Shown: piece after piece, positions 4,194 to 64,000 of the stretch | How positions within the stretch are numbered: position 1 is the stretch's first letter | Layout of the letters: every line of letters starts with the position of its first letter | DNA from: Convolutriloba macropyga | Taxonomy: Eukaryota | Assembly: GCF_964194025.1 (NCBI RefSeq) | Contig: NC_134481.1 | Coordinates: 23,994,001 to 24,058,000, forward strand | DNA: 64,000 nucleotides | Reading direction: 5' to 3' | Position numbers and translations under genes: made by a program | Notes under the pieces: generated by a model | The model's database searches: none | What the model was told of the DNA's origin: nothing | Seen by the model: only the letters and a program-made list of their open reading frames with translations

Positions 4194-4243
4194 CACTACT
4201 TAATCCTATTGCTACTATATCTACGGCTAGTACTAGTACTGGT
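4194..4243 (+). repeat. Degenerate TAC/TAG-rich microsatellite running into the first N gap
   Basis: actacttaatcctattgctactatatctacggctagtactagtactggt lies immediately before the Ns. Confidence 0.55.
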
Positions 4244-4631
4244 NNNNNNNNNNNNNNNNNNNNNNNNNNNNNNNNNNNNNNNNNNNNNNNNNNNNNNNNN
4301 NNNNNNNNNNNNNNNNNNNNNNNNNNNNNNNNNNNNNNNNNNNNNNNNNNNNNNNNNNNNNNNNNNNNNNNNNNNNNNNNNNNNNNNNNNNNNNNNNNNN
4401 NNNNNNNNNNNNNNNNNNNNNNNNNNNNNNNNNNNNNNNNNNNNNNNNNNNNNNNNNNNNNNNNNNNNNNNNNNNNNNNNNNNNNNNNNNNNNNNNNNNN
4501 NNNNNNNNNNNNNNNNNNNNNNNNNNNNNNNNNNNNNNNNNNNNNNNNNNNNNNNNNNNNNNNNNNNNNNNNNNNNNNNNNNNNNNNNNNNNNNNNNNNN
4601 NNNNNNNNNNNNNNNNNNNNNNNNNNNNNNN

Positions 4632-5100
4632 NTCTTTCGAAATTAATGGAGAGAAAACTTGAGAGTTTCCACTGTGGTTGTCTTCGGAGAATTCTACGTG
4701 TGTCATATCTGGAGAAAGCAACGAACGAAGAAATTATGTCAAGATCACGAATGCCCCAACTATCCACGATGATCATGCTCAAACGGATAAAATGGTACGG
4801 ACACATCCAGAGAATGGAACCAGGAAGATTAGCCCGCAGTGCCTTCGATTGGGACCCGCCCGATCAATACGTCCATGCTAGACGCGCTCCTGGGGGGCAA
4901 CGGAAAACGTGGATGAGTCAAATCGAAGGAGACTGTGTACGAAACAAAGTATCGTTCACCAGATTGCAGGAGAAAGCAGCAACCGGGTCAAAGAATGCCT
5001 TCAACAATTTCGTCGTACAGCACTTCACAGAATAACCAAACAAAAAACTCTTCTTGTTTTGTTTGTATTTGTTGCCAACCGTGCCTTTATTTCATATTTG
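4632..5100 (+). mobile_element. RTE-clade LINE 3' fragment (subfamily A), near-identical to 8461-8929
   Basis: Encodes KLMERKLESFHCGCLRRIL...KWYGHIQRM...PGGQRKTW, with only a few substitutions versus the neighbouring long copy, including the 3' UTR. Confidence 0.95.
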
Positions 5101-5233
5101 NNNNNNNNNNNNNNNNNNNNNNNNNNNNNNNNNNNNNNNNNNNNNNNNNNNNNNNNNNNNNNNNNNNNNNNNNNNNNNNNNNNNNNNNNNNNNNNNNNNN
5201 NNNNNNNNNNNNNNNNNNNNNNNNNNNNNNCAA

Positions 5234-5309
5234 CCTCACCTCCACGTGGTGTCCCATGGGGGTAGGTCATGTGCTGCGGCTCTCCGCTCACATGGTCGAG
5301 CTAACGAGG
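5234..5309 (+). ncRNA. HDV-like self-cleaving ribozyme core, copy A (5' P1 strand not visible, presumably in the N gap)
   Basis: P2 CCTC/GAGG; P3 ACC/GGT with L3 TCCACGT; P1 3' strand GTCCCAT; GG for P1.1; P4 GGTCATGTG/CACATGGTC plus GCGG/CCGC; J4/2 GCTAA with putative catalytic C5301. Confidence 0.85.
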
Positions 5310-5368
5310 CACTGGTCTTCTAGTTTGTGGCGCAATTAGTCGTATCTCAGCCTTCAAACACCAAAGCA

Positions 5369-8300
5369 ATGAGTACATTCAACCATGGCCCCGAGTCCCG
5401 TGTAAGGGGTGCTAAGAATCTCCCGAGGAACCAACTCAGAATTGCAACTTTAAACGTCAGAACACTGACCCAAGCCGGATCTTTAGAGGCTTTGAAAATG
5501 GATCTGGCGCAATACAAGTTGGATATTCTGGGAGTGCAGGAGACGAGATTGCAGGAGCAAGAAATTGATCTCGGAGACCACAAGCTCTACCTGTCTGACT
5601 CGTGGTTGTCTGGTGTAAAGTCGAGACAAGGAGGAGTGGGCGTTGCTGTAAAGAAGTCATTGATAAACAGCATCGTAGAACAAGTGGCTCTAAGTGAACG
5701 TATTTGCTACGTCAAGTTCGCGGCTCGGAGGAGAGCCAATCTAGCTGTTGTTGTCTGCTACGCACCTACGAATGAAGCTAGTCTCCAAGAGAAGGATTTG
5801 TTTTGGAGTCAACTTTCAGACCTAGTTTCCAGCTTCAAACATAGGGAGCGTATTTGTGTCATCGGTGACCTCAATGCAGAGCCTGGACACCAGTTGAATG
5901 ACACCATGAGCTGCAGAGGCCCGTTTGGAATGGGTGAAGAAAATGAAAACTCGGAAAAGTTGTTATCATTTTGCACTTCACACAAATTGCTCTTAGGTGG
6001 TACATGGTTCCAGCATCGACAAGTGCATCGGTACACCTACAACCCTCCCGATCCGAGTTGTCGAAAAAAGATGCTGGATCACATTCTGTTTGCAGAGAGA
6101 TACAGAGGATGTCTGACGAAAGTGAGGACCAGAAGAGGGAAAACCACAATTACCGATCATGAATTGGTCATTGCGGAAGTATCTATGAAACTTTTGTCTA
6201 AAAAGCCATGTTTCACGCCCAGAATCAGTTCTGCAAAGCTGCAAGATGAAACAACGCGTGACTTATTCACGCAGGAGGTCAAGTTACATCTTGATAAGAG
6301 CGGCGATTTCGAGAATACAGAGCAGTCTTGGGACAATTTTCGAAAAGCCCTGAACCAAGCAGCAGTGAAATGCCTCCTTCCGGACAAGCGAGTGAACAAA
6401 CCTTGGATTTCTCCAGATTCTCTGGAACTTATCCGGAAACGAGCTGATCTACAGTTGAAGAAACACAGCAGCGCGGTGGCGTTGTTAGAGTTCACAAACT
6501 GCTGTAAGGAAGTCAGAAAAGCTCTACGTGCAGACAAACGGGCATGGCTTGACCGCAAAGGCCAAGAAGTGCAGAGCTTTGCGGACAGAGGCAACTTGAA
6601 GGAGGTTTTTGGGGCATCACAGCAGATTTGCCGCAACTGGAGTCCCCAGTTGACCAAATTAGTTTCAAGCACTGGCGTCAACTTACGGACGAAAGAGGAA
6701 CGACTTGAACGCTGGACGGAACATTTTAGTCAACTCCTGAATCCCTCAACATCCAGTTGCAGTACGAGATTGGATCCCGAAGAAGCAGCTGAAAGCTTGT
6801 CGATTGACCCCAATTCGATTTGAAGAAGTGCTTGAAGCTGTCCGCAGGTTGAAGAATGGCAAGGCAAGTGGACCCGATAACATTTCCTGTGAGATGTTGA
6901 AAGCACGCAAGGGTATTGTCGAGTGGCTCTGGGACATCATAGATAAGTGTTGGTCGACGGAAGTTCTGCCCGATGACTGAAAGGTAGCAGAAATTGTCCC
7001 ATTATACAAGAGTAAAGGAAAGAGGTCAGAGTGTTCGAACCACCGAGGGATCTCTCTATTGTCAGTACCAGGCAAAGTGTTCGCTTCCGTTATTCTCAAT
7101 CGATGCAAAGATTCAGTGGATCGCGTCTTAAGGGAAGAGCAGCGCGGCTTCAGAAAAAGCAGAGGATGAGCCGATCAACTCTTTGCCCTGCGTCAAATAA
7201 TAGAGAAATCTATGGCGTTTCAATTGGATATTAGCTTTTGTTTCATAGACTTTCGAGCGGCATTCGATTCTGTCGATCGTGAGCAGATGTACCAGATAAT
7301 GAAACACTATGGTCTTCCGCAAAAAGTGATAAACATCATAAGAAACAGCTATGATGGATTCAAATGTCGAGTCAAAGCCGAAGGTGAGAAAGGACGCTTA
7401 TTTGATGTCAGAACGGGCGTTAGGCAGGGTGATGTGTGGTCCCCAATCCTATTCGGCCTTGTCATCAACTACATTTTGGCTAACTCGGTGCATGGAGGAT
7501 TAGACATTGGGAGATTGGTGGCTGACTTAGATTTTGCTGATGATGTTGCTCTCGTGGGGGTCTCAGACAGTGAGGTGCAAGAAAACCTACATCGAATCGA
7601 GGCCCTTGCGGAAGCCGCTGGTCTGAAGATTAATGTGGCCAAAACAAAGAATTTGGGCGTAAAATGCGACAGCTCAAATATTGTTGCAGTGCCTAGTATC
7701 CAACAGAACGTGGAGATACTCACTGGAACACATAAAGGCAAACTAGGACTCCTGGCAGAGACATCTAGCCAGTCACGACTAACCATCAGCACGGAGGTGC
7801 TGCTGGGAACGAAAAAGAAAGCGTGCTGGTTCGAAACACAAGATGGCCGGAAGCTAAGATTGAAAAGCTTAGCGGTGGCTAAGCCAGCGTTGGTAGCTTC
7901 ACAACAACAATCTGCAGTAGCAGATTCAGAGTCGCTAGAAAATGAGAGTCGGTCAGTGGTGGCTGACCAAGAGTCTTTAAGATGTCAGAATTGTCAGCGG
8001 CAATTCAGTACAGTTACCGGACGCAAAGTGCACCAAACAAGATTCTGCAAAGCCGGTTTGTCAAAGAATGTCGTCGACAAGTCAAAGTTCGAGCAACTAG
8101 AGGCGAGTCTTACCTGTGACAAGTGTGAAAGAAAGTTCAAAACAGTCAATGGCCGAAAAGTTCACCAATCGAGATACTGTGGCAAACCTAAAGCAGTTGC
8201 CACACGCGTGTTTTCCTGCAAAGTACAAGATGTTCTCGGAAACGAGTTTGAAAACATAGAAGCGTTCAAGTATCTCGGATCATATGTCAGCCTCAAGCAT

Positions 8301-8864
8301 GGAGACCTGCAGGAAGTCAATTGCAAACTTGCAGAAGGTAGACAACGGTTTGCTAACTTCCAAAATCTCTGGAAGGGCAAGCAGCTCAGCGTGCACCTCA
8401 AGTGCAATTTGTACAAAGCACTCGTTTTATCAGCCGTGCTGTACAGCTCAGAGACTTGGACTCTTTTGAAATTAATGGAGAGAAAACTTGAGAGTTTCCA
8501 CTGTGGTTGTCTTCGGAGAATTCTACGTGTGTCATATCTGGAGAAAGCAACGAACGAAGAAATTATGTCAAGATCACGAATGCCCCAACTATCCACGATG
8601 ATCATGCTCAAACGGATAAAATGGTACGGACACATCCAGAGAATGGAACCAGGAAGATTAGCCCGCAGTGCCTTCGATTGGGACCCGCCCGATCAATACG
8701 TCCATGCTAGACGCGCTCCTGGGGGGCAACGGAAAACGTGGATGAGTCAAATCGAAGGAGACTGTGTACGAAACAAAGTATCGTTCACCAGATTGCAGGA
8801 GAAAGCAGCAACCGAGTCAAAGAATGCCTTCAACAATTTCGTCGTACAGCACTTCACAGAATAA
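5369..8864 (+). pseudogene. RTE APE-endonuclease/RT ORF with a frameshift near 6808 and in-frame TGA codons at 6978 and 7167
   Basis: ORFs 5327-6823 and 7212-8864 are bridged by an alternative frame reading PIRFEEVLEAVRRLKNGKASGPDNI...PDD*KVAEIVPLYK...NHRGISLLS...EEQRGFRKSRG*ADQ. Confidence 0.92.
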
Positions 8865-9266
8865 CCAAACAAATAACTCTTCTTGTTTTGTTTGTATTTG
8901 TTGCCAACCGTGCCTTTATTTCATATTTGGAATTAAAGTGTNNNNNNNNNNNNNNNNNNNNNNNNNNNNNNNNNNNNNNNNNNNNNNNNNNNNNNNNNNN
9001 NNNNNNNNNNNNNNNNNNNNNNNNNNNNNNNNNNNNNNNNNNNNNNNNNNNNNNNNNNNNNNNNNNNNNNNNNNNNNNNNNNNNNNNNNNNNNNNNNNNN
9101 NNNNNNNNNNNNNNNNNNNNNNNNNNNNNNNNNNNNNNNNNNNNNNNNNNNNNNNNNNNNNNNNNNNNNNNNNNNNNNNNNNNNNNNNNNNNNNNNNNNN
9201 NNNNNNNNNNNNNNNNNNNNNNNNNNNNNNNNNNNNNNNNNNNNNNNNNNNNNNNNNNNNNNNNNN

Positions 9267-10198
9267 CAACCTCTCCTCCCCGTGGTGTCCCCTGGGGTAA
9301 GTGATGCAGCAGCTGCCCGTAGGACAGATGCATAGTACAACCGAGCTAACGAGGCAAGGATCCTCTAGTTGGTGGCGCGACTAGTTGTATATAAGCCTTA
9401 AAACCCAATGCAATGACTTCAATACTGCGGAAGAGAAAATGCTGGAAGGTCTCGCATTTTCTCCTGCAATTTCCACGATCGAGATGGAGTGGAGTTCGAA
9501 AATGTAGAAGCTTTCAAGTACCTGGGTTCTTTCGTGAGCTTGCAACATGGTGATCTAAAGGAAATCCGTGTCAAGCTGGCGGAAGGGAGACATTGATTTG
9601 CGAGCTTTCAGAAGCTTTGGAAAAGCAAACAACTTAGTATTCCCCTCAAATTCAAGTTATACAGAGCTCTTGTGTTATCAGTGGTCTTTTGTAGCTCTTA
9701 AACGTGGACCATGAATAAATCAACGCAACGGAAACTTGAGAGCTTTCACACCAGTTGTCTGCGAAGGATACTATGTTTATCATATATGGAGAGGGTGACA
9801 AATGAAGAAGTACTGGCTAGATCATGTATGTCGACACTTTCTGCAATGATCATGATTAAATGGTTGAAATGGTTTGGCCATGTCCTGAGGATGAATGACG
9901 ATCGTCTAGCGCTTCGAGCCTTCACCTGGGAGCCGACAGAAAAATATTGTTATGCTAAACGAGCTTCAGGGGGTCAACGCAAGACGTGGCTGGACCAACT
10001 TGAAGAACATTGCTCAAGGAACAACATGAGCTACATCACCTTACGACAGAAAGCGAAAAAAGAGTCTAAATCCCGCTTGAACAGTTTTGTCGAACAGCAT
10101 TTCCTGGATTAAATAAACGCAAATAAGCTCAACTTATATACATTTAATTAACTTGTTTGTACTTATTTTCATTGTACCTTTATTTCTTTATGGAATTT
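9267..10198 (+). mobile_element. Internally deleted non-autonomous RTE copy (subfamily B)
   Basis: Ribozyme, 5' UTR and ATGACTTCAA are fused at about 9422 to YCG...FENVEAFKYLGS and the C-terminus. About 2.8 kb is missing relative to copy A. Confidence 0.88.
9270..9354 (+). ncRNA. HDV-like ribozyme core, copy B
   Basis: CCTC-TCC-TCCCCGT-GGT-GTCCCCT-GG, a different P4 (GGT/ACC, ATGCA/TGCAT, CTG/CAG), then GCTAAC-GAGG. One P3 mismatch. Confidence 0.8.
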
Positions 10199-10453
10199 NN
10201 NNNNNNNNNNNNNNNNNNNNNNNNNNNNNNNNNNNNNNNNNNNNNNNNNNNNNNNNNNNNNNNNNNNNNNNNNNNNNNNNNNNNNNNNNNNNNNNNNNNN
10301 NNNNNNNNNNNNNNNNNNNNNNNNNNNNNNNNNNNNNNNNNNNNNNNNNNNNNNNNNNNNNNNNNNNNNNNNNNNNNNNNNNNNNNNNNNNNNNNNNNNN
10401 NNNNNNNNNNNNNNNNNNNNNNNNNNNNNNNNNNNNNNNNNNNNNNNNNNNNN

Positions 10454-13400
10454 AATCCATCCTCACCTCCCAGTGGTGTCCTCTGGGGTAAGCGTTGCGG
10501 GGCTCTGTCGCGCAAGCTGAGCTAACGAGGCAATGGTCCTCTAGTAGGTGGCGCGACTAGTTGTATTATAGCCAACAACCCTATAATAAGACTTCAACTA
10601 ATGAGAAAAGCCACGAGTCCCGAGTAAGGATTGCTAAGAATCTCACGTGGACAAAAATGAAGATTGGATTCCTAAATTTCAAGACGTTTGCTCATGCTGG
10701 TTGTTAGCAGACGCCTAAAATGGACTTAGCAAAGTACGAATTAGACATTTTAGGAATTCAAAAAACCATATTTGACGAACAGGCGATGGACCTTGGAACG
10801 CACAAACTCTTGTTTACCAACTCATTGCGTTGCTTCAATTGTTCAAAAAAAAGCAGTTGTGGACATTTTGGTTAAGAAGACACTGCTTGGCTGCATAATC
10901 GAAAACGTGACTGTGAATGAACGCTTGTGCTATATCAAATTTTCTGTGCAGTAAAAAACAAATTTCATCGTCATTGTATGTTATGCGCCGGCAAATGAAG
11001 CGGATATTTAAAATAAAGGAAGGGTTTTAAGGATTTTTGAACACTCTAACAAGTTTGACAAAATGTTTCAGAGAAAGGGAGCGCAAAAGTCTTATCGGAG
11101 ACTTCAATGCAGTGCCGAGAAGTAATAAACAGATTAAACATCTATGCATTGGCTCTTTTGGTTTTGGCGATGAGAACGATAACACAGAAAATTTATGAGT
11201 CTCTGTGATGCAAACAAACTAATGATTGGAGGAATATGGTTTCGCCGCCGTTTTGTGCATAGGTACACTTTCAACCCACAGCATAAAAAATGTAGGAAGA
11301 AACTGTTGGATCGTGTATTGCTCACAAGTCGTTAAGGCAGCTGTTTACAAGATGTCAGAACCAAAAAAGGAAATTCTACTTTGACTGATCATGAATTATT
11401 GAGAGCACTTTTAGATATTAAACTGCAGAACTCTAAACTTCGTATAACTGCAAAAATTAAACTGACAAAATTGCATGACGAAGTGGTTCAAACCGAGTTC
11501 AACAAATTAGTGAAAATAAAATTGCATGAGAATGAGGATGTTGACGACGTTGAACAATCGTGGCTCATTTTTCGCAGTGCTCTTAACGAAGCTGCCTCAA
11601 ATGTAATTGTGCAGGATATAAAAATCACAAGCCATAGATATCTAAAGAGACAATCGATCTCATTATAAAGAGAGGCGAGATGCAGTTAAAGAAAAACTCA
11701 AGCAAAGCGGAGGCTTTGTTTTAGACCAATTTGAATAGATAAACGAACTCAAGTGAAGCAGAGGCTTTGGTTGAGTAAACTGACACTAAACCTAACAAAC
11801 CGGAGACTTTGATAGAATTTGAAGACTGCTACAAACTTGTGCAAAATACTGTGCGGGCTGATAAAAGAAAATGGCTCACTGAAAAAGGTACTCTGATTCA
11901 AGAACTTGCTGATAAAGATAGCATCAAAAAACAAAACTTTTTGTTTTTTGATGCTCTTGATCACTACTTCGTACAAGGGCAACATCATCAGCAAAGTCAA
12001 GGTCCGCAACAATTTGGCCAATGTCTGTTCCACCACGCACGACTTCGAACAGGAAAAGAGACCATACATCACCTTGACGAACTCCAGCTCTAACCTCAAA
12101 TGTATCCCCTACCTCTCCTTCAGATTTGACTCGACATTTGAAGCCGTCATAGCTATTCCTGATAATGTTCACAATTTTTACAAGTAGTCCATATTGTTTC
12201 AGTATTTCGTACATGCTGTCTCTCACAATTGAATCAAAAGCCAATCTAAAGTCAATAAGGCAGAGACTAAGATCACTTGGTTCCACAACGCTTTTTCAAT
12301 AATCTATCTTAGCGCAAAAAGCTGGTCGGTACAACCTCTGCTCTTCTTGAATCCACACTGCTCTTCCCTCAATACCTTATCTAGATTTTCCTTGCATCTG
12401 TTTAGAGATACTGCGGCAAACACTTTCCCGGCACTGACAGTAGAGAGATGCCACAATAATTGCTACAGTCTGTTCGTTTTCCATTCTTCTTGTACATAGG
12501 ATTGAAGAAACTGCGCAGAAGGTTGGTTTCCTGAATAACTTTAGCATGACCAAGAACATGGGTGTATCGCTTCAACACACAATGGCCTTAACATCAGCAC
12601 AGCAAAATCAAGTCGAGATTATAAAAGGACGTTACAAAGGACAATCTGGATTCCTCGGGAAGATAGACAAAACCTTGAGTTTATCCATTGGCACGGAGGT
12701 GCTCGAGGGAACGAAGAAAAAAATTAGGCTGGTTTGAAACCTTGAAAGGAGACAAATTCTGACATGCAAGACTGGTCACAATGGACCACCGGAACTTACA
12801 AACGAATCAAACAATGCTCGAAGTGTAAGCGTTGTTTTGATACTGCGGTTGGACGAAAAGTACCCGAGTCAAGATATGGCAAGAAAGCTGATGAAAACAC
12901 AATGCCTCAGTTAGTGAAGCCCATTGGTGCGAAGTTCGAAAACCTTGAAAAGAACTTTAGATGAAATAGATGCCAACAAAAATTCAAGTCTGTAACGGTC
13001 GGTCGAAAAATACAAGAAGCGAGATATTGCGGTAAACTGAAAGCCAGAGTTCATAGATGTCTTTCTAGCAGTGTAAAGGACGCTTCGGGTACCGAAATTG
13101 AGAGCGTTCGTGGTTTAAATTGTCTAAGATCTTACGTCAGTTTACAGGACGGTGATGCAGAAGAAAATATCTGTAAATTGGCTGAAGGTAGACAACGCTT
13201 CAGTGATTTTTCGAACATATGGAAAAACAAACAATTAGCGACAACATTGAAGTGCAAGCTTTACAGAGCGTTCATCTTGTCAGCGGTGTTGTGCAGCTCG
13301 GAGACATGGACGATAAACCAAGCGTTAGTGAAAAAACTCGATAGCTTACATCTCAACTGCCTACGTTGTATACTTTGTTTGTCTCACATGCCAAAATAAC

Positions 13401-13827
13401 TAACCAGTCTGTGCTTAACAAAACACTGATGCCAACCATATCAAAAATTGTCTTAATCAGACGCTTTAAATGGTTTGGACACATCCAAAGAATAGAGAGC
13501 AACAGACTGCTAAGGAAAACTCTTGAAAGGCACCCCACTGAGCACTATCCAAATGCCGTGAAATCTGTTGGAGGACAGCGAAAGACATTGCTAGATCAAC
13601 TGCAAAACGACTGCAACAGAAACAAGATAGATTTTTCAGTGGTTCAAGTAAGAGCTATTAGCAATTCGAGATCAGTCTTCAACAAATTCGTCAACGAAAA
13701 ACTTCTCGTTTAATTGATAACTTGATTTCGATTTAATTTAATGATTACTACGTTTATATTCTTGCCTGAAATCCATGCTTGATTGTCTTGTGATAGTGCT
13801 TCTATTTCTTAATGGAATTCAAGTGTT
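10454..13827 (+). mobile_element. Old degraded RTE copy (subfamily C) with an internal deletion and an inverted RT block (about 11936-12493)
   Basis: Fragmented APE motifs on +; IDFRLAFDSI/GVRQGD/DFADD on the minus strand (ORF 11924-12286); + strand resumes with HRIEE...TKNMGV, the KOW/ZnF insert and the C-terminus. Confidence 0.9.
10461..10530 (+). ncRNA. HDV-like ribozyme core, copy C
   Basis: CCTC-ACC-TCCCAGT-GGT-GTCCTCT-GG, P4 AGC.TTGCG/CGCAA-GCT, then GCTAAC-GAGG. Confidence 0.83.
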
Positions 13828-13858
13828 GTATCAGTAGTAGTATTAGTAGTAGTATTAC
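13828..13858 (+). repeat. (TAG)n-like tail at the 3' end of RTE copy C
   Basis: gtatcagtagtagtattagtagtagtattac directly follows the conserved 3' end ggaattcaagtgtt. Confidence 0.8.
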
Positions 13859-13859
13859 T

Positions 13860-14398
13860 TGTATTATTTGTCAATGGTCTTTTTTAGCTCTGAAACGTGG
13901 ACCATGAACAAACAAACGCAGCGAGTAAATGAAAGTTTTCACTGCAGTTGTCTGCAAAGGATCCTATGTATATCAAACCTGGAGAGGATGACAAATGAAG
14001 GAGTACTAGCTAGATCACTTATGTCGACTTTTTCTGCAATGATCATAATGAAACGGTTTAAATGGTTTGGCCTTGTCTTGAGGATGAATTACAATCGTTT
14101 AGAGCTCCGAGTCTTCACCTGGGAGCCGACAGAAAAATACAGTTAAGAAAACGAACTCCAAGGGGTCAACGCAAGACATGGCTGGATCAACTTGAGGAGG
14201 GCTGCTCAAGACACGACATGAGCTACATCGCCTTACGACAGAAAGCCAAAAAAGAGACTAAATCCCGGTTCAACAGTTTTGTCGAAGAGCATTTCTTGGA
14301 TTAAAAAGCTCGAAAAAACTCAAACTTATATGCATTTTATTACCTTGTTTGTACTTATTATCGTTGTTCCTTTATTTCTTTATGGAATTTAAGTGTTT
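13860..14398 (+). mobile_element. 5'-truncated RTE 3' fragment (subfamily B)
   Basis: SSETWTMNKQTQR...PRGQRKTWLDQLEE...EHFLD is highly similar to 9670-10198, including the 3' UTR. Confidence 0.9.
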
Positions 14399-14404
14399 AA
14401 AAAA

Positions 14405-62598: not shown

Positions 62599-63378
62599 TG
62601 GTTACCTAAGCGAGTTTTAACTTGTACATATCAAGAGTATTGGTGAAAAATAATTTGTGTATTGGATCTTAAGCTACCTAGTGGATACCTAACCGAGTTT
62701 TAACTTGTACATATCAAGGATATTGATGAAAAATAACTTGTTTATTGGATCCTAAGCTACCTGCTGGTTACCTAAGCGAGTTTTAACTTGTACATATCAA
62801 GGGTATTGGTGAAAAATAACTTGTGTATTGGATCCTAAGCTATCCGCTGGTTACCTAAGCGAGTTTTAACTTGTACATATCAAGGGTATTGGTGAAAATA
62901 ACTTGTGTATTGGATCCTAAGCTACCTAGTGGATACCTAACCGAGTTTTAACTTGTACATATCAAGAGTATTGGTGAAAATAACTTGTGTTGGATCCTAA
63001 GCTACCTAGTGGATACCTAAGCGAGTTTTAACTTGTACATATCAAGGGTATTGGTGAAAGTAACTTGTGTATTGGATCCTAAGCTACCTAGTGGATACCT
63101 AACCGAGTTTTAACTTGTACATATCAAGGGTATTGGTGAAAGTAACTTGTGTATTGGATCCTAAGCTACCTAGTGGATACCTAACCGAGTTTTAACTTGT
63201 ACATATCAAGAGTATTGGTGAAAAATAACTTGTGTATTGGTTCCTAAGCTACCTAGTGGATACCTAAGCGAGTTTTGACTTGTACATATCAAGAGTATTG
63301 GTGAAAAATAACTTGTGTATTGGATCCTAAGCTACCTAGTGGATACCTAACCGAGTTTTAACTTGTACATATTAAGGG
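62599..63378. repeat. Minisatellite, about 9.4 copies of an 80-83 bp unit
   Basis: Unit gg(a/t)tacctaa(g/c)cgagttttaacttgtacatatcaag(a/g)gtattggtgaaaaataacttgtgtattggatcctaagctacctagt. Confidence 0.97.
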
Positions 63379-64000
63379 CATTGTTGACATTTTTGTGGCC
63401 GAACATAGTAGTGTGGAGAGCAAAAGGGAGTGCAAAGCGGAGAGCAAGGTGGAGAGCAAGTTGGAAACCGACTGCAGAAAAGGAATAATTCAGTTAGTCC
63501 TTTTAAGTATTACATCTTTTTGTCCAGTTTTTTTTGGGGTTTTTTTTATTTCAAAACTCTCCTCTTTGTCTCATGGCATTTTAATTCATCACCAATTTCT
63601 GATGTTGCTCACCTTTATATTTTTGTTTGTTGATAAATTCTATATATATATTTGGAATTAATTTTAATATCTTGGCTGGAGTACAATGTCTTGAGATAAA
63701 CAGTCTGAAGAGTAGCAGGAACTGTACTCGCTTGACGCCAGTTGACTCCTTGCCTTCTTAACTTTGGCAACCCCAATGATTGAGAAGCGGACCTTGCTGG
63801 TTTAGAGAAACCCCATTGCGAAAATTAGACGGCACCAGTTCACAAAGTTTTAACACGCACCACCATTCACAAACACTCACTGAGTTCACTTAGACAATTA
63901 GATCAGTTGTAGGGTAGATTATGACAGATTGCTACAATCGACACAGATGATCTACGGAGGTAACTATGAACATGTTCCTAGTTTTTTCGAGACAAAGAGG

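What the first reader, a model, noticed from the sequence alone, without database searches (positions are those of the whole stretch)
5234..10530. Three HDV-like ribozymes with near-invariant cores and freely varying P4
Seen: 5234-5309, 9270-9354 and 10461-10530 share CCTC-(A/T)CC-TCCnnGT-GGT-GTCCnnT-GG...GAGCTAAC-GAGG. P4 differs in sequence and length yet pairs in each copy. The P1 3' strands differ (GTCCCAT, GTCCCCT, GTCCTCT), which predicts hidden 5' strands of about RTGGGAC, RGGGGAC and RGAGGAC. Known: HDV-like ribozymes occur at the 5' ends of R2, some RTE and L1Tc elements. The class is therefore not new, but these instances are probably unannotated.
Basis: partly seen in the sequence, partly recalled or inferred. 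Interest (0 to 1): 0.78.

Follow-up and report, generated by a model that had tools for sequence, protein, structure and literature searches.

The report
HDV-like ribozyme heads of RTE retrotransposons
Three head-to-tail copies of an RTE-type jumping gene each begin with most of a known kind of self-cutting RNA (an HDV-like ribozyme) whose first bases lie in assembly gaps, so this is a new example of a known arrangement, not a new mechanism.

Summary
At 5231-5315, 9267-9360 and 10454-10536 three paralogous sequences show, in HDV order, P2, P3, L3, the P1 3' strand, P1.1, a variable P4 hairpin, J4/2 with the catalytic C (5301, 9346, 10522) and the P2 3' strand. Each heads an RTE-like non-LTR retrotransposon (APE + RT) in a head-to-tail array (4633-14403).

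The P1 5' strand and cleavage site lie in the gaps.

Six ungapped paralogues at other loci (Convolutriloba macropyga and an ENA assembly) all read (GTA)n, then GGGGGRC, then AAAAUCCAA, then the same core. Their P1 pairs at 6-7 of 7 positions. Those copies give sub-threshold Rfam hits to drz-agam-1 (E 0.004) and HDV_ribozyme (full length, E 0.026). Unrelated metagenomic ribozymes with the same core show compensatory P1 and P2 changes.

Within this family the 3'-strand changes are one-sided. The window copies sit in broken elements, and copy 2 has a weakened P4.

Verdict: new member of a known kind. The scan has already noted the same ribozyme elsewhere in this genome. Interest is low to moderate.

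The parts
5231..5315 (+). Ribozyme copy 1, visible part. J1/2 end 5231-5233; P2 5234-5237 with 5306-5309; P3 5238-5240 with 5248-5250; L3 5241-5247; P1 3' strand 5251-5257; P1.1 G's 5258-5259, pairing with C5242-5243; P4 region 5260-5297; J4/2 5298-5304 with catalytic C5301; outer P2 extension up to 5315.
   Evidence: 98.7-99.1% identical element copies elsewhere carry the full ribozyme
9267..9360 (+). Ribozyme copy 2, visible part. P2 9270-9273 with 9351-9354; P3 9275-9276 with 9284-9285 (the third pair is U.U); L3 9277-9283; P1 3' strand 9287-9293; P1.1 9294-9295; P4 region 9296-9342 (weakened); catalytic C9346.
10454..10536 (+). Ribozyme copy 3, visible part. J1/2 remainder AATCCAT 10454-10460; P2 10461-10464 with 10527-10530, plus outer CCAT/ATGG; P3 10465-10467 with 10475-10477; L3 10468-10474; P1 3' strand 10478-10484; P1.1 10485-10486; P4 region 10487-10518; catalytic C10522.
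   Evidence: a close relative, L003, matches RF00094 end to end
5101..5230 (.). Assembly gap directly upstream of copy 1. It would hold the P1 5' strand, the cleavage site and the junction with the previous element. Not filled.
8942..9266 (.). Assembly gap directly upstream of copy 2. Not filled.
10199..10453 (.). Assembly gap directly upstream of copy 3. Not filled.
5316..8941 (+). Body of element 1 (RTE-like). It has a 5' UTR with a conserved hairpin; an APE reading frame 5369-6823; a frameshift near 6790-6820; an RT frame with in-frame TGA at 6978-6980 and 7167-7169; an RT/C-terminal ORF 7212-8864; and a 3' UTR running to the gap. The copy is broken.
   Evidence: Pfam Exo_endo_phos 2.9e-12 and RVT_1 3e-17; translations; homologues named 'craniofacial development protein 2-like'
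9361..10198 (+). Body of element 2. It is an internally deleted derivative of about 0.9 kb, in which the ribozyme and 5' UTR are joined directly to the last ~780 nt (RT C-terminal region and 3' UTR).
10537..13827 (+). Body of element 3. It belongs to a diverged subfamily (about 65% nt identity to element 1), is degenerate, and has an inverted segment at 11942-12494.
13828..13870 (+). The only readable inter-element junction in the window: a degenerate (GTA)n microsatellite between the 3' end of element 3 and a 5'-truncated element (13871-14403).
4633..5100 (+). 3' fragment of a further element 1-type copy (99.4% identical to 8462-8930), between two gaps.

Best explanation
These are the 5'-terminal HDV-like self-cleaving ribozymes of three subfamilies of an RTE-like, (GTA)n-tailed non-LTR retrotransposon of an acoel worm (Convolutriloba macropyga or a very close relative).

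Inferred mechanism. The promoter-less element is transcribed by read-through from upstream, here from the previous element in the array. The RNA folds into the nested double pseudoknot. The J4/2 cytosine (C5301, C9346, C10522) catalyses cleavage immediately 5' of the first G of P1. This removes the upstream (GTA)n and leaves a unit-length RNA that starts with the ribozyme itself. The ribozyme is therefore copied into every full-length insertion. The folded 5' end may also help translation of the uncapped RNA from the AUG about 55 nt downstream.

Insertion into (GTA)n, including the tails of earlier copies, builds the head-to-tail array.

Shown: the sequence architecture, the family-level P1 and P2 pairing, the RTE-like coding capacity and the (GTA)n junctions. 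Inferred: cleavage, co-transcription and the translation role. The three window copies sit in broken elements, so their individual activity is uncertain.
For: - All visible elements are in HDV order with a near-invariant core.
- A variable P4 hairpin sits at the same place in three unrelated sequences.
- Six of six ungapped paralogues read (GTA)n, GGGGGRC, AAAAUCCAA and then the core, with P1 pairing at 6-7 of 7 positions and a G.U closing pair at the cleavage site (97.6% of P1 cells paired).
- Rfam: drz-agam-1, E 0.004, with about 78% identity over the 5' 37 nt. HDV_ribozyme RF00094 aligned 1-89 of 89, E 0.026.
- Eight metagenomic ribozymes sharing the core have compensatory changes at P1 pairs 2, 3 and 4 (6, 6 and 5 double changes; 0 of 500 shuffles reach this; slid controls reach 54% paired at most, against 95.5% for the whole tested structure and 97.8% for P1). 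P2 also covaries: CCUC/GAGG, CCCAA/UUGGG, CCCUU/AAGGG, CUCUC/GAGAG, CCCUG/CAGGG.
- Pattern hits that lack the other features pair only 1-5 of 7 in P1.
- Each ribozyme lies 50-110 nt upstream of an APE-RT ORF.
- HDV-like ribozymes at the 5' ends of RTE, R2, R4, baggins and L1Tc are published (PMC3774820, PMC6765202). RTEs with microsatellite 3' ends are published (PMC2887409).
Against: - No Rfam family reaches its gathering score, and the window itself gives no HDV hit even at E 10, because P1 5' and J1/2 are in the gaps.
- Within the acoel family the core never covaries. The copies are too similar, so fold support comes from more distant ribozymes that were retrieved with a pattern taken from this core.
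- Copy 1 has A where the family has C in the P1 3' strand. That is a likely mismatch against the family-typical strand.
- Copy 2 has three P4 disruptions.
- One paralogue (L001:1627) has a C.C mismatch in P1. Another (L002) has GA instead of GG at P1.1.
- No RNA data are on record, and no cleavage has been measured.
Confidence: 0.85

Rival explanations
1. The three window copies are only relics. The family ribozyme is real, but these particular copies are catalytically dead or 5'-incomplete. Causes would be mutated P1 or P4, or loss of the P1 5' strand within the gaps. On this reading they are fossils in broken elements.
For: Element 1 has a frameshift and two in-frame stops. Element 2 is internally deleted and element 3 is rearranged. 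Copy 1 deviates from the family P1 3' strand. Copy 2's P4 is no more stable than shuffles. P1 mismatches are reported to abolish in vitro cleavage in other HDV-like ribozymes (PMC3774820).
Against: The catalytic core (L3, P1.1, P3, J4/2 C, P2) is intact in all three copies. P4 is dispensable in many HDV-like ribozymes, and three metagenomic relatives lack it altogether. Element 1 is about 99% identical to other copies, so it is young. This rival concerns activity, not identity, and is compatible with the best explanation.
Confidence: 0.4
2. The conserved 5' block is not a ribozyme. It would be another 5' UTR function, such as an internal promoter, an IRES or a binding site for the element's protein, that merely resembles the HDV core.
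For: The core is invariant within the family, which by itself fits any sequence-specific function. A further invariant hairpin follows the block. Rfam scores are below the gathering thresholds.
Against: The unspecified features (P1 complement, GG for P1.1, C-NAA J4/2, P2 complement) co-occur in every true relative and are absent from chance pattern hits. P1 and P2 covary across lineages. P4 is conserved as a helix only. The element's first nucleotide coincides with the predicted cleavage site right after (GTA)n in 6 of 6 junctions.
Confidence: 0.06
3. The resemblance of a repeated sequence to the HDV motif is due to chance.
For: Short G+C-rich motifs are involved. Only three copies are in the window, and they are paralogues.
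Against: The Rfam E-values of 0.004 and 0.026 were computed against all 4227 families. RF00094 aligns over its full length. The position is exactly at the element 5' end, as in published RTE and R2 cases.
Confidence: 0.01

Closest known systems
drz-Agam-1 ribozyme of Anopheles gambiae (Rfam RF01787)
   Same: It is the best Rfam match (31.9 bits on L001, 34.9 on a metagenomic relative). It shares J1/2 AAAAU, a P2 that starts CC and ends GG, ACC-UCCnCGU-GGU-GUC for P3/L3/P1', and J4/2 CUAAC. Identity to the model consensus is about 78% over the first 37 nt.
   Different: The score is below the gathering threshold (37). P4 is longer and of three unrelated types. P2 is interrupted by an internal loop. 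The host is an acoel, and the ribozyme heads a (GTA)n-tailed RTE-like element. I could not retrieve the primary papers to check the genomic context of drz-Agam-1.
HDV ribozyme (Rfam RF00094) and the general HDV-like fold
   Same: The nested double-pseudoknot order is the same. So are the 7-bp P1 closed by G.U, the 3-bp P3, L3 with the two C's that pair with GG (P1.1), and the J4/2 cytosine followed by NAA and P2'. The alignment of L003 is end to end.
   Different: The score is 38.3 bits against a gathering score of 50. J1/2 is longer (9 nt). The context is a retrotransposon, not a viral circular RNA.
HDV-like ribozymes at the 5' ends of non-LTR retrotransposons (R2, R4/Dong, baggins, RTE, L1Tc)
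   Same: The position is at the exact 5' end of the element. The predicted role is to release the element RNA from a co-transcript. Cleavage falls at the element junction, as reported for RTE, R4 and L1 (PMC3774820; PMC6765202). An internally deleted derivative keeps the ribozyme and the 3' end, like the R2 non-autonomous derivatives (PMC3414825).
   Different: The upstream co-transcript here would be a (GTA)n microsatellite or the previous element, not rRNA. P1 is formed entirely by element sequence, unlike many R2 ribozymes, which use 28S sequence.
Bacterial/phage-type HDV-like ribozymes (HDV-F-prausnitzii, RF02682)
   Same: The metagenomic relatives found with the core pattern score 29.6-37.7 bits against RF02682 and share AAAAUCC ... 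CUCUGG.
   Different: Those relatives sit next to RAGATH-11 and twister-like motifs, not next to APE/RT genes. Several lack P4.
RTE-clade elements with microsatellite 3' ends (PMC2887409)
   Same: There is a single APE+RT reading frame, a short 3' UTR ending in a simple repeat, and many 5'-truncated copies.
   Different: The repeat here is (GTA)n, which also precedes every readable 5' end. This implies insertion into (GTA)n and head-to-tail arrays of different subfamilies. The RT carries a ~190-aa insert with two zinc-finger-like motifs.

Membership tests
HDV-like self-cleaving ribozymes | P1 helix (6-7 bp) between the first nucleotides of the RNA and the strand following P3, closed by G.U at the cleavage site | tested here: inconclusive
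   In the window only the 3' strands are readable; they end in U at 5257, 9293 and 10484. The 5' strands lie in gaps that were not filled. In 6 of 6 ungapped paralogues at other loci, P1 pairs at 6-7 of 7 positions with G1.U.
HDV-like self-cleaving ribozymes | P3 (2-3 bp) enclosing L3 of 7-8 nt, whose two C's pair with the GG after P1' (P1.1) | tested here: met
   CC/GG with L3 UCCnnGU, and GG directly after the P1 3' strand, in all three window copies. P1.1 cells are 94-97% paired.
HDV-like self-cleaving ribozymes | P2 pairing the segment before P3 with the 3' end (second pseudoknot) | tested here: met
   CCUC/GAGG is 100% paired in 9 of 9 copies. P2 covaries in more distant relatives. An outer CC/GG extension is also present.
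HDV-like self-cleaving ribozymes | Catalytic cytosine in J4/2 (the C75 equivalent), followed by NAA and P2' | tested here: met
   GAGC-UAA-CGAGG with C5301, C9346 and C10522. This aligns with GGC-UAA of RF00094 in the relative L003.
HDV-like self-cleaving ribozymes | P4 helix, variable or dispensable, between P1.1 and J4/2 | tested here: met
   There are three unrelated hairpins of 38, 47 and 32 nt at the same place. Copy 2 is weakened.
HDV-like self-cleaving ribozymes | Score at or above an Rfam gathering threshold (RF00094, RF01787, RF01788, RF02682) | tested here: not met
   The window gives no hit. Ungapped paralogues score 31.9 against 37 and 38.3 against 50 bits. The gathering score is a curation cut-off, not a defining property of the fold.
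HDV-like self-cleaving ribozymes | Mg2+-dependent self-cleavage 5' of G1, giving 5'-OH and 2',3'-cyclic phosphate | not testable with these tools
   No RNA run is on record for this organism. This is a bench assay.
RTE-clade non-LTR retrotransposons | Single ORF with an N-terminal APE endonuclease followed by RT, and no separate ORF1 | tested here: met
   Exo_endo_phos lies at aa 26-245 of the first frame, with RVT_1 downstream. The ORF starts about 55 nt after the ribozyme.
RTE-clade non-LTR retrotransposons | Short 3' UTR ending in a simple repeat instead of poly(A) | tested here: met
   A 3' UTR of about 80-100 nt is followed by (GTA)n at the readable junction 13828-13870 and at all junctions of L001-L005.
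RTE-clade non-LTR retrotransposons | Phylogenetic placement of the RT within the RTE clade | not tested
   Support is indirect. The named homologues are 'craniofacial development protein 2-like' and Schistosoma proteins. From my own knowledge these are RTE-derived. No reference RT tree was built.

The most novel reading that the evidence does not exclude
The (GTA)n-linked head-to-tail arrays may work as self-processing multimers. One read-through transcript would cross several promoter-less elements of different subfamilies. The ribozyme at each junction would cut it into unit-length RNAs, which would also mobilise the ~0.9-kb internally deleted derivative that keeps only the ribozyme head and the 3' tail. 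In addition, the ribozyme shares a sequence-level core (AAAAUCC ... ACCUCCnCGUGGUGUC ... CUAAC ... GG) with mosquito drz-Agam-1 and with bacterial/phage-type HDV-like ribozymes. This would point to one old, widely spread ribozyme lineage rather than repeated convergence.
Probability: 0.3. Interest if true: 0.5.

Novelty: new member of a known kind. Interest (0 to 1): 0.3.

Why it matters
It extends the known link between HDV-like ribozymes and RTE-type retrotransposons to Xenacoelomorpha. It also gives three naturally diverged P4 variants on one invariant core.

In this family every readable 5' junction abuts the element's own tail repeat, (GTA)n. That explains the head-to-tail arrays and why such junctions break short-read assemblies.

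For annotation, the practical lesson is that Rfam thresholds miss these ribozymes, and miss them completely when the first 16 nt are in a gap. It does not change what is known about how these ribozymes or elements work.

Tried and rejected
- Rfam on the window at gathering and at E up to 10 gave no HDV family. The hidden 5' strand explains this.
- Plain MFE folding of the visible parts is uninformative, because the fold is a pseudoknot.
- Core covariation within the acoel family is nil. The copies are too alike.
- A covariance model built from the metagenomic relatives was abandoned. MAFFT misaligned the P4-less members, and the model would have been partly circular.
- Distant RTE relatives L006 and L007 (about 30% aa identity) have a conserved 5' leader but no Rfam ribozyme hit at E up to 1. 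I did not pursue them.
- RNA evidence: no RNA run is on record, only contig-level runs of unknown kind. I did not use read laying, because contigs cannot show RNA ends and the cleavage sites lie inside the gaps.
- Papers: the primary papers on drz-Agam and on RTE ribozymes (Webb 2009; Ruminski 2011) are not held. I cite them only through PMC3774820, PMC6765202 and PMC4908430.
- Gaps: I did not fill them and did not look for this locus in another assembly. L001-L005 turned out to come from the same or a very close species. Element copies there are 98.7-99.1% identical, but the window flanks do not match, so they are other loci. I used them only as other copies of the family and make no statement about the letters in the gaps.
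Full report
**What is in the window.** The stretch 4633-14403 is a head-to-tail array of related non-LTR retrotransposons on the + strand. It contains:
- a 3' fragment (4633-5100);
- a nearly full-length copy (5231-8941);
- an internally deleted copy of about 0.9 kb (9267-10198);
- a diverged, rearranged copy (10454-13827, with an inverted piece at 11942-12494);
- a 5'-truncated copy (13871-14403).

N runs lie at 4244-4632, 5101-5230, 8942-9266 and 10199-10453. The last three end 0-3 nt before the shared motif.

The full-length copy encodes an Exo_endo_phos (APE) domain (E 2.9e-12) and RVT_1 (E 3e-17). It is broken by a frameshift near 6790-6820 and by in-frame TGA codons at 6978-6980 and 7167-7169. 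Its nearest named homologues are an uncharacterised protein of the acoel Convolutriloba macropyga (60% identity) and, at about 30%, 'craniofacial development protein 2-like' and Schistosoma proteins. From my own knowledge these names are typical of RTE-derived sequences.

**The observation.** The three stretches are as described. The parse is:

CAA / CCTC / N / CC / TCCnnGT / GG / T / GTCCnnT / GG / variable 32-47 nt / GAGCTAA / CGAGG / CAnnGG.

The core is nearly invariant, and the 14-mer around the P1 3' strand occurs only at these three places in the window. The order and the letters match HDV closely:
- P3 is CC/GG, plus an A-U pair in copies 1 and 3.
- L3 is UCCnnGU.
- The 7-nt P1 3' strand ends in U.
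- GG for P1.1 faces the two C's of L3.
- J4/2 is C-UAA.
- P2 is CCUC/GAGG.

The P4 segments are three unrelated sequences. Each forms a hairpin that starts 4-5 nt after P1.1 and closes directly before GAGCUAA. Their energies are -14.0, -9.8 and -13.2 kcal/mol. Copy 2's P4 is no better than shuffled sequence, whereas intact relatives of the same type reach -25.1 (z -5.0). So copy 2 has decayed.

**Why Rfam is silent on the window.** Rfam finds nothing on the window at gathering thresholds or at E up to 10. The P1 5' strand and most of J1/2, roughly 16 nt, would lie in the gaps.

**Ungapped copies elsewhere.** I followed the 60%-identical C. macropyga protein to its locus (L001), and four diverged ENA proteins to theirs (L002-L005). 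This gave six ungapped ribozyme heads. These loci also hold copies 98.7-99.1% identical to window element 1. The window's unique flanks do not match them, so they are other loci of the same or a very close species. I used them only as further family members.

All six read: a long (GTA)n, then GGGGGRC (once GGCGGAC, once with an expanded G run), then AAAAUCCAA (AAAAUCCAU in L003), then the same core. P1 pairs at 7 of 7 positions in five copies and 6 of 7 in one, with G.U at the first pair (97.6% of cells paired).

Copy 3 of the window still shows AATCCAT before P2. This is the tail of that J1/2.

**Match to known families.** On the ungapped copies Rfam gives two hits:
- drz-agam-1 (RF01787): 31.9 bits against a gathering score of 37, E 0.004, with about 78% identity to the model consensus over the first 37 nt.
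- HDV_ribozyme (RF00094): aligned over all 89 model positions, 38.3 bits against 50, E 0.026.

These are below threshold but specific, and both E-values are for a search of all 4227 families.

**Covariation.** Within the acoel family the core does not vary, so it says nothing for or against the fold. The only P1 changes are one-sided: A/G at position 6, and C to U in L004, each giving G.U.

To get independent lineages I scanned metagenome contigs for AAAATCC, a gap of 6-9 nt, then CCTCCnnGnGGTGTC. Of 16 loci, seven (L009, L010, L014, L017, L018, L020 with two copies, L022) carry every unspecified feature as well: a 7-nt complement upstream, GG after P1', C-NAA, a P2 complement and a closing ...CUCUGG. 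Pattern hits without those features pair only 1-5 of 7 positions in P1 and lack the GG.

On the joint alignment (A3):
- P1 is 97.8% paired.
- There are compensatory double changes at pairs 2, 3 and 4, in 6, 6 and 5 sequences.
- 0 of 500 shuffles reach the observed covariation.
- Sliding the partner drops pairing across the tested structure from 95.5% to 54% or less.

P2 covaries too: CCUC/GAGG, CCCAA/UUGGG, CCCUU/AAGGG, CUCUC/GAGAG, CCCUG/CAGGG.

A caveat applies. These metagenomic ribozymes lie beside RAGATH-11 and twister-like motifs and score against HDV-F-prausnitzii. They are probably bacterial or phage sequences, not RTE elements, and they were fished with a pattern taken from this core. 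They show that this core belongs to the HDV-like fold. They do not show that the acoel copies cleave.

The arithmetic is right, but the covariation reading is not supported. The family-typical 3' strand is GUCCCCU. Copy 3 (GUCCUCU) differs by a C-to-U change that would still pair with a G, as in L004. Copy 1 (GUCCCAU) differs by C to A, which would need a compensating U. Its 99%-identical relative in L001 has the consensus 3' strand and a C.C mismatch elsewhere in P1. In young, broken copies, point decay is the simpler reading. The letters that would decide this are in the gaps.

**Mechanism.** The sequence shows that the ribozyme's first G is the first nucleotide after (GTA)n at six of six readable 5' junctions. 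It also shows that the elements end in (GTA)n. Neighbours in an array belong to different subfamilies of about 65% identity, so the arrays arose by repeated insertion into (GTA)n, not by tandem duplication.

The rest is inferred from published work on R2, RTE, R4 and L1Tc (PMC3774820, PMC6765202, PMC4908430). Read-through transcription from upstream would be followed by self-cleavage 5' of G1 by the J4/2 cytosine. This would release a unit-length RNA that begins with the ribozyme, with possible help in translating the uncapped RNA. Priming on (GTA)n at the 3' end would fit RTE elements with simple-repeat tails (PMC2887409).

**Novelty.** HDV-like ribozymes heading RTE elements are published, and the fold and its role are known. 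My literature searches found nothing on acoels. Earlier notes of this scan already describe the same ribozyme at RTE 5' ends and head-to-tail arrays on other pieces of this genome. This is a new member of a known kind, and the interest is low to moderate.

**Not done.** No cleavage or RNA-end evidence exists here. No RNA run is on record, and read laying was not used because the cleavage sites are inside the gaps. RTE clade placement rests on domain order, tail type and homologue names, not on a tree.

Noticed in passing
window 5319-5343, 9364-9388, 10540-10564 (also L001-L005): Directly after the ribozyme there is an almost invariant hairpin, CUAGU-loop-ACUAG, in a block TCTAGTTGGTGGCGCGACTAGTTGTAT. 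It is conserved across subfamilies that are otherwise about 65% identical. There is no real covariation: most changes are one-sided, and the single double change lies at the outermost pair of a weak outer stem. It could be a protein-binding or translation element of the 5' UTR.
   Followed up: partly
window 7665-8230: An insert of about 190 aa with two Cys-x2-Cys ... His-x4-Cys zinc-finger-like motifs lies inside the RT, between the palm motifs and the F-KYLG region. It is also present in the diverged copy. Another finding of the scan notes it.
   Followed up: no
window 9267-10198: An internally deleted derivative of about 0.9 kb keeps only the ribozyme and 5' UTR (156 nt) and the last ~780 nt. 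It resembles the non-autonomous R2 derivatives.
   Followed up: partly
L004:1339-1348: The G run that forms the P1 5' strand is expanded to GGGGGGGGGC in one copy. This suggests slippage or untemplated G addition at the element's 5' end. It could shift the cleavage site.
   Followed up: no
L009, L010, L018, L020 (metagenome contigs): Clusters of several ribozyme-like motifs sit on short contigs: HDV-like (two per contig in some), RAGATH-11 (77.6 bits against a gathering score of 79.4 on L010) and a twister-P1-like hit. L020 carries two HDV-like copies in inverted orientation.
   Followed up: partly
L006:1-181 and L007:780-965: Two distant RTE-like elements (about 30% aa identity) from other metagenomes share a conserved, G+C-rich 5' leader ending ...GGCCTAACAAGTC. 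No Rfam match was found. It may be a different 5' ribozyme or structured leader.
   Followed up: no
window 62599-63387: An 83-bp tandem repeat, 9.6 copies, 93% matches (satellite-like).
   Followed up: no
window 4200-4243 and 14380-14403: Array boundaries. The left flank ends in TAC/TAG-type simple sequence just before the first gap. The last element ends ...AAGTGTT and is followed by TAAAAAAC, without a (GTA)n tail.
   Followed up: no
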